Part shown: positions 5,054 to 6,578 of the stretch, one piece after another | How positions within the stretch are numbered: the stretch's first letter is position 1 | Layout: every line of letters begins with the position of its first letter | Origin: Stylophora pistillata | Lineage: Eukaryota | NCBI RefSeq assembly: GCF_002571385.2 | Contig: NW_019217913.1 | Span: 52,035-116,034 of the forward strand | Length of the DNA stretch: 64,000 bases | Direction: 5' to 3' | Notes under the pieces: model-generated | The model's input: the letters and a program-made list of their open reading frames with translations, nothing else | Database searches by the model: none | Told to the model about the DNA's origin: nothing | Program-made: the position numbers and the translations under genes

Positions 5054-6578
5054 ATGGCATGCCTGCCGTTCCACCGCTGTGTTGGAGTAACTCCATCGCA
5101 GGTATTGACTTTCAATCGCTGACAAGATCCAGTCACGTGGCAACTGTAGGGGGAGTTTTTTAAACTAGAAAGACCCTTTGTTAACACGTTCCCTTCTCCT
5201 TGTGCTCCTAGCTCCAAACTATCTGACAGGGTCAGATGACGTACCTGCTGGAATGACCAACGTGAAGCAACCTGGAGGTTCCTTAACTGCTGCGGTTGGA
5301 GATGGAAAAACGGACGACACATCTGCCATCAAGGCCATCGTTAAACACGTAGAAGGTTCCACAAACAACAAGGTTTTCTTTCCTCGTGGTGAGTATTTGG
5401 TCGGCGGTGATATTGCTATAAGTGGCTCAGTGGAACTGCATGGAACCCAGAGTGGTATTGCTGTTATCAAGGCGTCGACTCCATATGCCATAAAAATACA
5501 CAATGCTTCACCTGTAAGCAGTGTTTCACTGCAGTATCTGTATTTTGACGGAATTCGTGTAGTATTTGAGGATCAAATCAAAGGGTCATCATCTACACGT
5601 GATATTACAATAGAGAGCTGTGTATTCTTTTCATCGGCAAGTCCAACTTCAAGTAACGGACAGAATCGACAATTGGTAATGATGGAGCTTGGAAACAGTG
5701 GTGTTTACAAAAACGTCTTTTTACGCGATTCGGGTGCATATGGAGTTGCTTCCAGATTTAGAAGTACTCTCAACGTTTGGGTAATTGGCAAAGTATGTGG
5801 CCTGGAGTTAAGTAAATTAGACTGGTTGTCTTCCAAAGTTGAGCCAGTATCCCATTGGCGAGATCAAAAAAAGAAATTAGAGTTCCTTAAGACTCATTAC
5901 AACCTTAAATCTGATCAAGGCTACTTTAAAAGTTGTCTTTATGACCAGTGCGACAAAAGAATGAAAATAGCGGAAAATATATTCAACGGAAGTCCCAATA
6001 CCGGCCGACACAGAGACCACGCCATGTACCTTAAAGGCTTTGACAACCTGGAAGTGAAAAGCAACTACGTTAGAGGTTGGCCTGCGAATCCATCAGGTGG
6101 GATCAAAGCGCGAAATGGGAAAAACCTTTGGCTTGCCCGTAATTACGTCGACGACACAGGAATTCTGTTGTATTCGCATAAAAACAGAAAACGCAAGGCC
6201 TGTCTTCACAATGGTCTCAAGAATGTAGTCATCTACGGAAATCACCTCGTACAGCGAACAAGACCAGGCAGACGAGAAAGCAGTTTAAGCTACTATGAGC
6301 CCCACTCAGTTGGAAAGGATGAGAATATCAAGTACTCTGCTAACGTATTTGAGATCGTTGGTTTTAGTCACCCTACTCAGTACACATGCATTTGGCTGAC
6401 CAATGGCGATCCGTCTCAACATCACGTGTACAGAGACAACGTGTATTATGGGACTTCGACACCAGTGAAGCTTCAAGCGGACGGAGGTACTCCATCATAC
6501 GAGACAAAGGATATCGACCAGGAAATAAAAAATCTGTACAACTATTCTGCATACAAACTGGACATTCCACCTTACTAA
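5054..6578 (+). CDS. Pectin-lyase-fold right-handed beta-helix protein (Pectate_lyase_3-type N-terminus), probably secreted
   Basis: Uninterrupted ORF 5169-6578 with AVGDGKTDDTSAIKA...VFFPRGEYLV and beta-helix-like repeats (DHAMYLKGFDNLEVKSNYV, NVVIYGNHL). Hydrophobic LLTRSLLLVLLA near the N-terminus. Best start model: exon 5054-5101 (ATG..CAG/GT, phase 0), 67-bp intron to TAG at 5168. AATAAA at 6848. The start model is less certain than the ORF. Confidence 0.8.

What the first reader, a model, noticed from the sequence alone, without database searches (positions are those of the whole stretch)
5054..6578. Bacterial-style polysaccharide-acting beta-helix gene in an animal genome: candidate domesticated horizontal transfer
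Seen: a 1.4-kb uninterrupted coding exon in a window where the other genes are split into many short exons. It lies in a transposon-rich zone and has a GDGxTDDTxAI/FPxGxY N-terminal motif, a hydrophobic leader, a possible 67-bp phase-0 intron supplying the ATG, and an AATAAA. Established: this motif typifies pectin-lyase-fold glycan hydrolases/lyases and phage tailspikes, mostly microbial. Inference: an acquired secreted depolymerase that could act on bacterial capsule or biofilm, or on algal/symbiont glycans; its substrate cannot be read from sequence.
Basis: partly seen in the sequence, partly recalled or inferred. Interest (0 to 1): 0.8.

Follow-up and report, generated by a model that had tools for sequence, protein, structure and literature searches.

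The report
Ancient bacterial beta-helix gene in corals
This coral (Stylophora pistillata) gene encodes a probably secreted beta-helix protein of bacterial type that the ancestor of corals most likely took from a bacterium hundreds of millions of years ago and has kept under selection; what it does is still unknown.

Summary
Window 5212-6578 (+) is the large last exon of a three-exon gene (exon 1 4358-4404, exon 2 4489-4595). It is annotated in GenBank as AWC38_SpisGene9047.

The protein passes Pfam PF12708 and folds confidently as a right-handed beta-helix. The closest structures are the alginate C5-epimerase AlgE4 and polysaccharide lyases.

Relatives form one well-supported clade of stony corals and octocorals. 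They share the same intron position and phase, so the gene was in the genome before those groups split. All other close relatives look bacterial (a Bacteroidota polysaccharide-utilization locus, T9SS tails, LPXTG, CBM96 modules). dN/dS against a Pocillopora-type ortholog is 0.17.

The genome holds three intact copies plus decayed ones in a tandem array. Contamination is excluded.

The conserved core has one acidic and seven basic positions. This favours lyase/epimerase-type action on an acidic glycan over hydrolysis, but that is inference. Expression evidence is patchy, and I found no paper that names the family.

The parts
4358..4404 (+). Exon 1: ATG plus a hydrophobic N-terminal segment (MIRDVVLFVSIILAL), a probable signal peptide. 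The donor is AG|GTAAGC.
   Evidence: tblastn of the paralog RefSeq model P0003 and of P. verrucosa P0318 onto the window. Sequence and translation. Frame check of the 3-exon model. Signal-peptide status is inferred from hydrophobicity; no predictor was run.
4405..4488 (+). Intron 1 (84 nt, GT..AG).
   Evidence: The same exon 1/exon 2 arrangement is seen in paralog L002 and in the Pocillopora-type scaffold L018.
4489..4595 (+). Exon 2: a basic linker (MGRSAARKH...VVKKQS). The donor is A|GTAAGC, phase 1.
   Evidence: The GenBank model of this very gene (P0001) maps here at 97% identity. Conserved in L002, L006, L004 and L018.
4596..5211 (+). Intron 2 (616 nt). It ends in a polypyrimidine tract plus AG at 5210-5211.
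   Evidence: Intron position and phase (inside the Thr codon of S-T-x-N-[YF]-L) are identical in the octocoral Dendronephthya.
5212..6578 (+). Exon 3: the whole beta-helix domain and the stop codon (6576-6578). Together with exons 1-2 it gives a 506-aa precursor.
   Evidence: ORF; PF12708; AlphaFold model with pLDDT 89.4 and pTM 0.91; fold matches.
5298..5396 (+). N-terminal cap motifs GDGKTDDTSAI ... FFPRGEY. This is the only part with sequence similarity to solved structures and to phage tail proteins.
6015..6173 (+). Candidate active-site block on successive rungs: D268-H269-x-x-Y272, K274, R287, K298, R300, Y320 (numbered from the Pro at 5214). These positions are conserved in 49 cnidarian and 36 bacterial-type sequences.
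   Evidence: Conservation counts. Rung spacing read from the DSSP string. The catalytic role is inferred.
6848..6853 (+). Nearest downstream AATAAA, a candidate poly(A) signal. A second candidate, ATTAAA, is at 6939.
   Evidence: Its use was not shown: contigs of RNA libraries cannot show transcript ends.
100..1850 (.). Interspersed repeat (transposon remnant) upstream of the gene.
   Evidence: Dozens of copies at 84-91% on many scaffolds. Pfam found no domain in its ORFs.
1850..4300 (.). Upstream segment repeated only within the same scaffold, next to the other copies of the gene. It is part of the tandem duplication unit.
   Evidence: Matches at C130:13497-16224, 20841-23514, 24694-27298, 34101-36651 and 46030-47494. 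The 3' flank 6600-7025 is also repeated beside two paralogs.

Best explanation
This is one member of an anthozoan gene family that descends from a single ancient bacterium-to-animal gene transfer. The transfer happened before stony corals and octocorals diverged, and the gene has been inherited vertically since.

After integration the gene gained a eukaryotic 5' end. In Stylophora this is a short exon encoding a signal-peptide-like segment, a linker exon and two GT-AG introns. The family then expanded by tandem duplication, with some copies decaying.

The product is a 506-aa precursor. Its mature part is one right-handed parallel beta-helix.

Most likely mode of action (inferred): the protein is secreted. 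It binds a polyanionic glycan (uronate-containing or sulfated) in a groove lined by the conserved D268/H269/Y272/K274/R287/K298/R300/Y320 positions on successive rungs. It then cleaves or epimerises the glycan by proton abstraction (lyase/epimerase chemistry) rather than by two-carboxylate hydrolysis.

Shown: gene structure by homology, integration in the host genome, distribution, the fold and purifying selection. Inferred: secretion, catalysis, substrate class and biological role (mucus or matrix remodelling, digestion, or attack on microbial or algal exopolysaccharide).
For: Identity and integration:
- 100% match to Stylophora AWC38_SpisGene9047 on a 654-kb scaffold.
- Host repeats and tandem copies flank the gene.
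- GC of 0.43 is in the host range.

Gene model:
-.
- The exon 2/3 intron has identical position and phase in Dendronephthya.

Distribution:
- Named hits are only Scleractinia (Stylophora, Pocillopora x3, Oculina, Montipora, Porites) and Octocorallia (Dendronephthya, Paramuricea).
- In 1.84 billion cluster representatives, 62 reach E<=1e-30. About nine are cnidarian; scores then drop from 378 to 314 bits at the first bacterial-type protein.

Bacterial nature of the others:
- A Bacteroidota PUL with SusC/SusD, GH20, heparinase II/III-like, two GH29 and a sulfatase.
- Bacterial gene neighbourhoods.
- T9SS tails, bacterial Ig domains, LPXTG and CBM96 modules.

Tree: the cnidarian clade has support 100/97 and all other rows lie outside it.

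Selection: dN/dS is 0.17 against the Pocillopora-type ortholog and 0.21 against the C427 paralog. The window copy agrees with 37 of 38 highly conserved columns.

Fold: pLDDT 89. Closest structures are AlgE4 (Z 31.0), an alginate epimerase/lyase (29.8) and the RbmB lyase (28.6).

Chemistry hint:
- Only one conserved acidic column in the core, against seven basic ones.
- 4 of the 20 bacterial relatives scanned (all in the first batch of 10) carry CBM96, whose founding member binds alginate (PMC9971899).
Against: - The backbone of the tree is unresolved (supports 59/28, 28/15). The bacterial sister P0095 is a long branch at 89/86. 'Nested within bacteria' therefore depends on the root, and no donor lineage can be named.
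Absence from sea anemones, medusozoans and other eukaryotes is 'not found', not shown.
- Expression evidence is weak. Contigs of four RNA libraries cover only pieces of exon 3 at low depth, no splice joint was seen, and DNA carry-over cannot be excluded.
- Structural matches to epimerases, lyases, hydrolases, tailspikes and an adhesin lie within a few Z units of each other, so the fold does not pick a chemistry.
- The PUL context (fucosidases, sulfatase, GH20) and CBM96 (alginate) point to different acidic glycans.
- The window copy has Lys where 88% of the family has Asn (position 193).
Confidence: 0.72

Rival explanations
1. Same origin, but the protein is a glycoside hydrolase acting on a neutral or pectin-like glycan (GH28/GH55/GH87-like).
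For: The Pfam family name is rhamnogalacturonase/epimerase. Sequence hits to GH55 beta-1,3-glucanases reach E 1e-14 with the family profile. Polygalacturonases are among the fold matches at Z 24-26. One bacterial relative lies beside a GH2 beta-galactosidase gene.
Against: The GH55 and rhamnogalacturonidase matches cover only the N-terminal cap, profile positions about 19-123. Only one acidic column is conserved in the core across 85 sequences, whereas beta-helix hydrolases use two or three carboxylates (the requirement is established knowledge of GH28). The protein has a single domain, not the double helix of GH55.
Confidence: 0.15
2. Same origin, but the protein is a non-catalytic secreted glycan-binding protein or adhesin, for example a mucus or matrix component or a microbe-binding lectin.
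For: The pneumococcal adhesin PfbA is among the top fold matches, at Z 28.3. No catalytic residue has been demonstrated.
Against: A polar/charged constellation (D-H, Y, K, R, Y) is kept almost invariant between bacteria and cnidarians, which is typical of an active site. Bacterial relatives sit in glycan-degradation contexts and carry their own separate CBMs.
Confidence: 0.08
3. An old eukaryotic or metazoan gene kept only in anthozoans (vertical descent with massive loss), or a transfer from anthozoans to bacteria.
For: In the unrooted tree the cnidarian clade is simply one side of a branch, and the backbone is unresolved.
Against: None of the bacterial-type relatives examined looked eukaryotic: five gene neighbourhoods and twenty domain scans gave bacterial contexts or bacterial-type accessory domains where any feature was informative. 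Bacterial relatives are deep and diverse in architecture, while the animal side is one clade with short internal branches.
Confidence: 0.04
4. Bacterial contamination or a misjoin in the assembly, or a dead pseudogene.
For: The gene sits in a repeat-rich zone. RNA support is patchy.
Against: GT-AG introns are shared with an octocoral. The same gene is present in independently assembled chromosome-scale coral genomes, on contigs of 25-42 Mb, and in Tara coral scaffolds. Host-type GC. The 506-codon frame is intact and dN/dS is 0.17. By contrast, the real pseudogene copies on C88 do carry stops.
Confidence: 0.01

Closest known systems
Uncharacterised bacterial secreted beta-helix proteins (PF12708 cap), e.g. 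the PUL-encoded T9SS protein P0094 of a Bacteroidota genome (GCA_028282195.1)
   Same: Full-length homology at about 30-33% identity, from the GDG-TDDT cap to the C-terminal I-P-x-Y. The conserved D-H / K / R / Y block and the Asn ladder are the same.
   Different: The bacterial proteins have bacterial signal peptides and often extra modules (T9SS tail, CBM96, Ig-like, LamG, LPXTG). The coral gene has introns, a eukaryotic leader exon and no extra module. None has a known activity or a CAZy family that I could establish.
Mannuronan C5-epimerase AlgE4 A-module and bifunctional alginate epimerase/lyases (PDB 2pyg, 8ja4)
   Same: Best structural match: Z 31.0, rmsd 2.9 A over 328 residues, and Z 29.8. 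Shared cap motif, E 5.6e-8 to 1e-4 with the family profile. A His- and Tyr-containing site is plausible.
   Different: Only 16-17% identity, and the sequence match stops at about position 123. The AlgE catalytic motif could not be mapped residue by residue here. The other lyases, hydrolases and tailspikes in the list score down to Z 19-29.
Horizontally acquired carbohydrate-active enzymes of animals (PL3 pectate lyases and GH28 polygalacturonases of nematodes and beetles); published coral HGT lists
   Same: A microbial glycan-enzyme fold fixed in an animal germ line, with introns and a signal peptide gained, gene duplication and purifying selection. Anthozoan-wide bacterial transfers are an accepted class: 28 of 41 candidates in PMC4878875, and 16 shared hexacoral/octocoral events in bioRxiv 10.64898/2026.05.06.723128.
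   Different: A different protein family. The host is a non-herbivorous cnidarian, so plant cell wall digestion is not the obvious use. This family is not named in either coral list.
Phage tailspike / capsule depolymerases
   Same: Right-handed beta-helix fold, Z 24-28. The cap motif hits PHROG tail-spike families at E 1e-5.
   Different: The similarity is confined to residues 20-90. There is no particle-binding N-terminal domain and no phage context in any relative examined.

Membership tests
Pfam PF12708 (Pect-lyase_RHGA_epim) | Whole-protein HMM score at or above the curated gathering cut-off (27 bits) | tested here: met
   53.3 bits, E 4.2e-14, residues 42-195 of the ORF translation.
Pectin-lyase-like right-handed parallel beta-helix superfamily | Single right-handed parallel beta-helix with stacked rungs and an Asn ladder | tested here: met
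   AlphaFold model with pLDDT 89.4 and pTM 0.91, nearly all beta. Z 20-31 to about 50 beta-helix structures. Six Asn columns conserved family-wide, spaced about one rung apart.
AlgE-type mannuronan C5-epimerase / alginate epimerase-lyase | Catalytic Tyr/Asp/His/Asp constellation of the A-module (from memory of the AlgE4 structure paper) in equivalent positions | tested here: inconclusive
   Best fold match, but the sequence alignment ends at about position 123. No residue-level superposition was available. The family has D268-H269 and Y272/Y320 but no second conserved Asp.
GH28 polygalacturonase / rhamnogalacturonase | Three conserved catalytic Asp in the NTD / DD / GHG / RIK motif set (established knowledge) | tested here: not met
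   Only one acidic column is conserved at >=80% in the core across 85 sequences. The NCBIfam rhamnogalacturonidase model scores 17.5 bits against a cut-off of 500.
GH55 beta-1,3-glucanase | Two tandem beta-helix domains in one chain of about 750 aa, with the active site between them | tested here: not met
   A single helix of about 455 aa. The GH55 hits align only to the cap motif of each GH55 half.
Phage tailspike depolymerase | Virion-attachment N-terminal domain, a trimeric spike and a phage genomic context | tested here: not met
   PHROG hits cover only residues 20-107. Relatives lie in cellular gene neighbourhoods. Oligomeric state was not tested.
Horizontally transferred gene domesticated in an animal | Physically part of the host genome, not a contaminant | tested here: met
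   Spliceosomal introns. Host interspersed repeats and tandem paralogs on the same scaffold. Orthologs on 25-42 Mb coral contigs.
Horizontally transferred gene domesticated in an animal | Recipient clade monophyletic, nearest relatives non-animal, absent from other animals | tested here: met
   Cnidarian clade supported 100/97, with all 32 other rows outside it. Named animal hits are anthozoans only. Caveats: the root and the donor are unresolved, and absence elsewhere is 'not found'.
Horizontally transferred gene domesticated in an animal | Functional in the host: expressed and under purifying selection | tested here: inconclusive
   Purifying selection is shown (dN/dS 0.17-0.21). Expression is supported only by low-depth contigs of RNA libraries over exon 3, without a splice joint.

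The most novel reading that the evidence does not exclude
Anthozoans carry a host-encoded enzyme of bacterial PUL type: a secreted lyase/epimerase for polyanionic glycans from a beta-helix family with no characterised member. They would use it to remodel their own sulfated or uronate-rich surface mucus, or to degrade bacterial or algal acidic exopolysaccharide. An old transfer would then directly shape the coral-microbe interface. Characterising it would also found a new polysaccharide lyase/epimerase family shared by corals and marine bacteria.
Probability: 0.3. Interest if true: 0.75.

Novelty: new member of a known kind. Interest (0 to 1): 0.52.

Why it matters
Corals live inside a mucus layer that feeds and filters their microbiome, yet few host enzymes acting on complex acidic glycans are known.

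This family has several features that make it worth testing:
- It is bacterial in origin.
- It has been retained since before hexacorals and octocorals split.
- It has been duplicated repeatedly.
- It is still under purifying selection.

That makes it a concrete candidate for such a role. It is also a clean, intron-dated example of ancient bacterium-to-animal transfer.

The whole family, bacterial members included, has no characterised member that I could find. One enzyme assay would therefore annotate both the coral genes and a set of marine bacterial PUL genes.

Tried and rejected
Rejected. It is not used by any annotated homologue and is not conserved in the Pocillopora-type ortholog.
- **Retrocopy idea for the C427 paralog.** Rejected. 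It keeps an acceptor-like site before exon 2 and lacks only intron 2, with a 14-aa insertion.
- **RNA evidence for splicing.** Four RNA libraries gave only short contigs over exon 3 and part of intron 2, with no joints. One contig starts at 5210, next to the acceptor. That is suggestive only.
- **Named bacterial genomes.**
  - The search for related loci with P0058 found nothing.
  - Alignments A2 and A3 were too divergent for pattern search.
  - Sampling 401 genomes of the phylum and 301 of the order of the PUL-bearing genome found the family only in that genome. The subfamily is therefore rare and patchy in bacteria, and no donor can be named.
- **Cluster look-ups.** These gave few names. 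A second word search seeded with the divergent cnidarian clades added no new named taxon.
- **ESM Atlas.** It gave only generic bacterial beta-helix clusters.
- **Pfam on flanking ORFs.** No transposon domain was found, although the DNA is repeated.
- **Literature.** Nothing was found for PF12708 plus coral, for the locus tags, or for pectin lyase plus cnidarian. The family is not named in the eLife 2016 coral HGT table, the 2026 deep-sea coral preprint (main text and held supplement) or the 2017 coral carbohydrase paper.
- **Limits I kept to.**
Searches used exon 3 by reference, and the other exons were checked by tblastn of public models onto the window.
  - The joined frame was checked only inside local scripts.
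  - The N run in the paralog's intron (L002) and the N run in the window near 15.3 kb were left as they are.
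Full report
**What is there**

The window is from the coral Stylophora pistillata. Translating the ORF gives a 100% match to GenBank AWC38_SpisGene9047 on a 654-kb scaffold, and the window is G000:C130:52035-116034.

It runs 5178-6578 on the + strand, 466 codons without a stop. It carries GDGKTDDTSAI and FFPRGEY near its start. It passes Pfam PF12708 at 53.3 bits against a 27-bit cut-off.

**Gene model**

Three public models all join an upstream exon ending in KKQ[ST] to the sequence beginning PNYL:
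- the GenBank protein of this gene (P0001);
- the RefSeq model of its tandem paralog (P0003, LOC111329230 isoform X2);
- the RefSeq model of Pocillopora verrucosa (P0318).

tblastn places these upstream parts at window 4334-4597. Reading the DNA gives:

| Part | Coordinates | Note |
|---|---|---|
| Exon 1 | 4358-4404 | MIRDVVLFVSIILAL, a signal-peptide-like segment; donor AG\|GTAAGC |
| Intron 1 | 4405-4488 | 84 nt |
| Exon 2 | 4489-4595 | basic linker |
| Intron 2 | 4596-5211 | 616 nt |
| Exon 3 | 5212-6578 | beta-helix domain and stop |

The three exons join in frame to 1521 nt, which is 506 codons plus the stop.

The Leu-rich leader is the translated polypyrimidine tract in front of the acceptor AG at 5210-5211. 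In a Pocillopora-type ortholog from a Tara Pacific scaffold (L018), exons 1 and 2 are conserved as protein.

I sent no joined protein to any search tool. Exon 3 was searched by reference, and the joined frame was checked only in local scripts.

**The intron dates the integration**

In the octocoral Dendronephthya gigantea (L019) the orthologous family member also has a leader exon. Its intron lies at exactly the same place and phase as Stylophora intron 2. Both interrupt the Thr codon of S-T-x-N-[YF]-L as A|CT. The gene was therefore already an intron-bearing nuclear gene before hexacorals and octocorals diverged. By established knowledge that divergence is a Precambrian-to-Cambrian event.

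**Copies in this genome**

One search found the following.
- Three intact copies: this one, C130:28140-29537 (86% identity, 29 kb upstream) and C427:194477-195847 (69%).
- Two copies with stop codons in an inverted pair on C88.
- Two fragments on C130.

The 2.4 kb upstream of the gene and the 0.4 kb downstream are repeated beside the other C130 copies, so this is a tandem segmental array. Window 100-1850 is an interspersed repeat with dozens of copies. This confirms the "transposon-rich zone".

**Selection**

Nei-Gojobori estimates on exon 3:

| Comparison | dN/dS | dS |
|---|---|---|
| Pocillopora-type ortholog | 0.17 | 0.31 |
| C427 paralog | 0.21 | |
| Young tandem paralog | 0.56 | |

In the last comparison the excess change falls mainly on the paralog's side. 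The window copy matches the consensus at 37 of 38 columns that are at least 85% conserved in the family.

**Distribution and origin**

Named relatives are only anthozoans:
- Scleractinia: Stylophora, Pocillopora damicornis, P. meandrina, P. verrucosa, Oculina, Montipora, Porites.
- Octocorallia: Dendronephthya, Paramuricea.

A full HMMER search was run with a cnidarian profile against 1.84 billion cluster representatives. It found 62 proteins at E<=1e-30. About nine of them are cnidarian-type, at 378-713 bits. Scores then drop to 314 bits and below for proteins that look bacterial.

I checked five of these by gene neighbourhood:
- P0094 lies in a Bacteroidota polysaccharide-utilisation locus. 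The locus has ECF sigma/FecR, SusC, SusD, this protein with a T9SS tail, GH20, a heparinase II/III-like protein, two GH29 fucosidases and a sulfatase.
- P0096, P0095 and P0057 lie among ordinary bacterial genes.
- P0101 lies beside a GH2 gene.

Domain scans of twenty of these proteins show T9SS tails, bacterial Ig domains, LamG, an LPXTG anchor and, in four, CBM96.

In an IQ-TREE analysis (LG+C20 PMSF, 55 rows) the cnidarian sequences form one clade with support 100/97, and all 32 others lie outside it. The nearest outsider, P0095, is a long branch at 89/86, and the backbone is unresolved (the 85-row quick tree agrees).

Inside the clade there are three groups:
- an octocoral group that includes Dendronephthya;
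- a group that includes Paramuricea;
- a scleractinian group.

This fits an early duplication followed by vertical descent.

The subfamily is rare in bacteria. It was found in 1 of 401 sampled genomes of the phylum and 1 of 301 of the order of the PUL-bearing genome, and that one was the genome itself.

Together these results make a single old bacterium-to-anthozoan transfer the best reading. The donor cannot be named, and absence from sea anemones, medusozoans and other eukaryotes is "not found", not proven. Contamination is excluded by three things: the shared introns, the host repeats, and the presence of the gene on 25-42 Mb contigs of independent coral assemblies.

**Fold and likely chemistry**

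The AlphaFold model of exon 3 is confident, with pLDDT 89.4 and pTM 0.91. It is an almost all-beta right-handed helix. The best structural matches (Foldseek agrees) are:

| Structure | Z | Note |
|---|---|---|
| AlgE4 mannuronan C5-epimerase | 31.0 | rmsd 2.9 A over 328 residues |
| Alginate epimerase/lyase | 29.8 | |
| Vibrio polysaccharide lyase RbmB | 28.6 | |
| Adhesin PfbA | 28.3 | |
| Tailspikes, polygalacturonases, PL6 lyases | 19-28 | |

The fold is certain, but it does not pick out a family.

Sequence similarity to any solved structure or phage family is confined to the N-terminal cap. No NCBIfam model fits.

Across 49 cnidarian and 36 bacterial-type sequences, the conserved positions are:
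- an Asn ladder;
- D268-H269-x-x-Y272, K274, R287, K298, R300 and Y320, numbered from the Pro at 5214.

These lie about one rung apart. Only one core column is conserved as acidic, against seven conserved as basic.

Beta-helix hydrolases such as GH28 need several carboxylates. Lyases and epimerases of uronate polymers use His, Tyr, Lys and Arg. I therefore favour lyase/epimerase-type action on a polyanionic glycan.

Three contexts agree on an acidic glycan but not on which one:
- CBM96 modules, whose founding member binds alginate (PMC9971899);
- AlgE4 as the top fold match;
- a PUL with fucosidases, a sulfatase and a heparinase-like lyase.

All of this is inference. No activity is known for any member.

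**Expression**

Contigs from four RNA libraries of four studies lie on pieces of exon 3 (5210-5621, 5845-6057, 6211-6586) at 95-100% identity and low depth. Some also lie on part of intron 2 (4683-4980). None lies on 5021-5209 or on exons 1-2, and no splice joint was reported.

This shows presence in RNA libraries, not a transcript structure. The gene model therefore rests on homology and on the public RefSeq models.

**Literature**

I found no paper naming this family in cnidarians. It is not named among the 41 anthozoan HGT candidates of PMC4878875, although three unnamed "predicted/hypothetical protein, Bact" entries cannot be excluded. It does not appear in the 2026 preprint that reports 126 coral HGT events, 16 of them shared by hexacorals and octocorals. 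It is also absent from the 2017 paper on coral carbohydrases.

**Verdict**

This is a real and well-supported case of an ancient, domesticated bacterial gene in corals, with a corrected three-exon model. It is a new member of a known kind of event. Its interest lies in the uncharacterised enzyme family and its possible role at the coral surface, not in the fact of transfer itself.

Noticed in passing
L003 (G000:C427:192977-197347), ORF 1498-3000 (-): The C427 paralog has exons 2 and 3 fused into one ORF with about 14 extra residues (GSEVDDGDSLLLR) where intron 2 lies in the other copies. It keeps an acceptor-like site before exon 2. This is apparently a loss of the ancient intron in one paralog.
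   Followed up: partly
G000:C88:53948-55345 (+) and 58436-59812 (-); L004, L005: An inverted pair of family copies with 2 and 8 in-frame stops: pseudogenes. GenBank splits one of them into two short models (SpisGene7067/7068).
   Followed up: partly
G000:C130:10461-11522 (-) and 40796-40945 (+); L006, L008, L009: Truncated copies in the same tandem array. One lacks residues about 308-421; the other keeps only the first 50 residues of exon 3.
   Followed up: no
window 7734-8110 and 10172-10382: Two short interspersed repeats, each with at least 9 copies among the 40 candidates scored, at 78-89% across many scaffolds (SINE- or MITE-like). They lie between the beta-helix gene and the next gene.
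   Followed up: no
L011 (GCA_028282195.1 contig JANQII010000110.1), genes 243-16798: The best bacterial relative sits in a complete SusC/SusD locus with GH20, a heparinase II/III-like protein, an unannotated 412-aa protein, two GH29 fucosidases and a sulfatase. It is a candidate PUL for a sulfated, fucosylated acidic glycan whose beta-helix enzyme is uncharacterised.
   Followed up: partly
P0100, P0104, P0106, P0115 (bacterial relatives): C-terminal CBM96 modules are attached to this beta-helix family. Other relatives carry LamG, bacterial Ig, T9SS or LPXTG modules.
   Followed up: partly
window 5790-5792 (residue 193 counted from the Pro at 5214): The window copy has Lys where 88% of the family, including the tandem paralog, has Asn (motif N-[IV]-x-G-L). 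This is the only departure from 38 highly conserved columns.
   Followed up: no
L019 9322-11713 (Dendronephthya gigantea RSEI01000001.1): A second PF12708 gene lies 2.6 kb downstream of the octocoral family member, so tandem duplication of this family also occurs in octocorals.
   Followed up: no
window 4683-4980: Contigs of two RNA libraries lie inside intron 2. They may be unspliced RNA, a repeat transcript or DNA carry-over.
   Followed up: no
L002 about 1390-1510 and window about 15.3 kb: Runs of N (gaps or masked sequence). They were left untouched.
   Followed up: no
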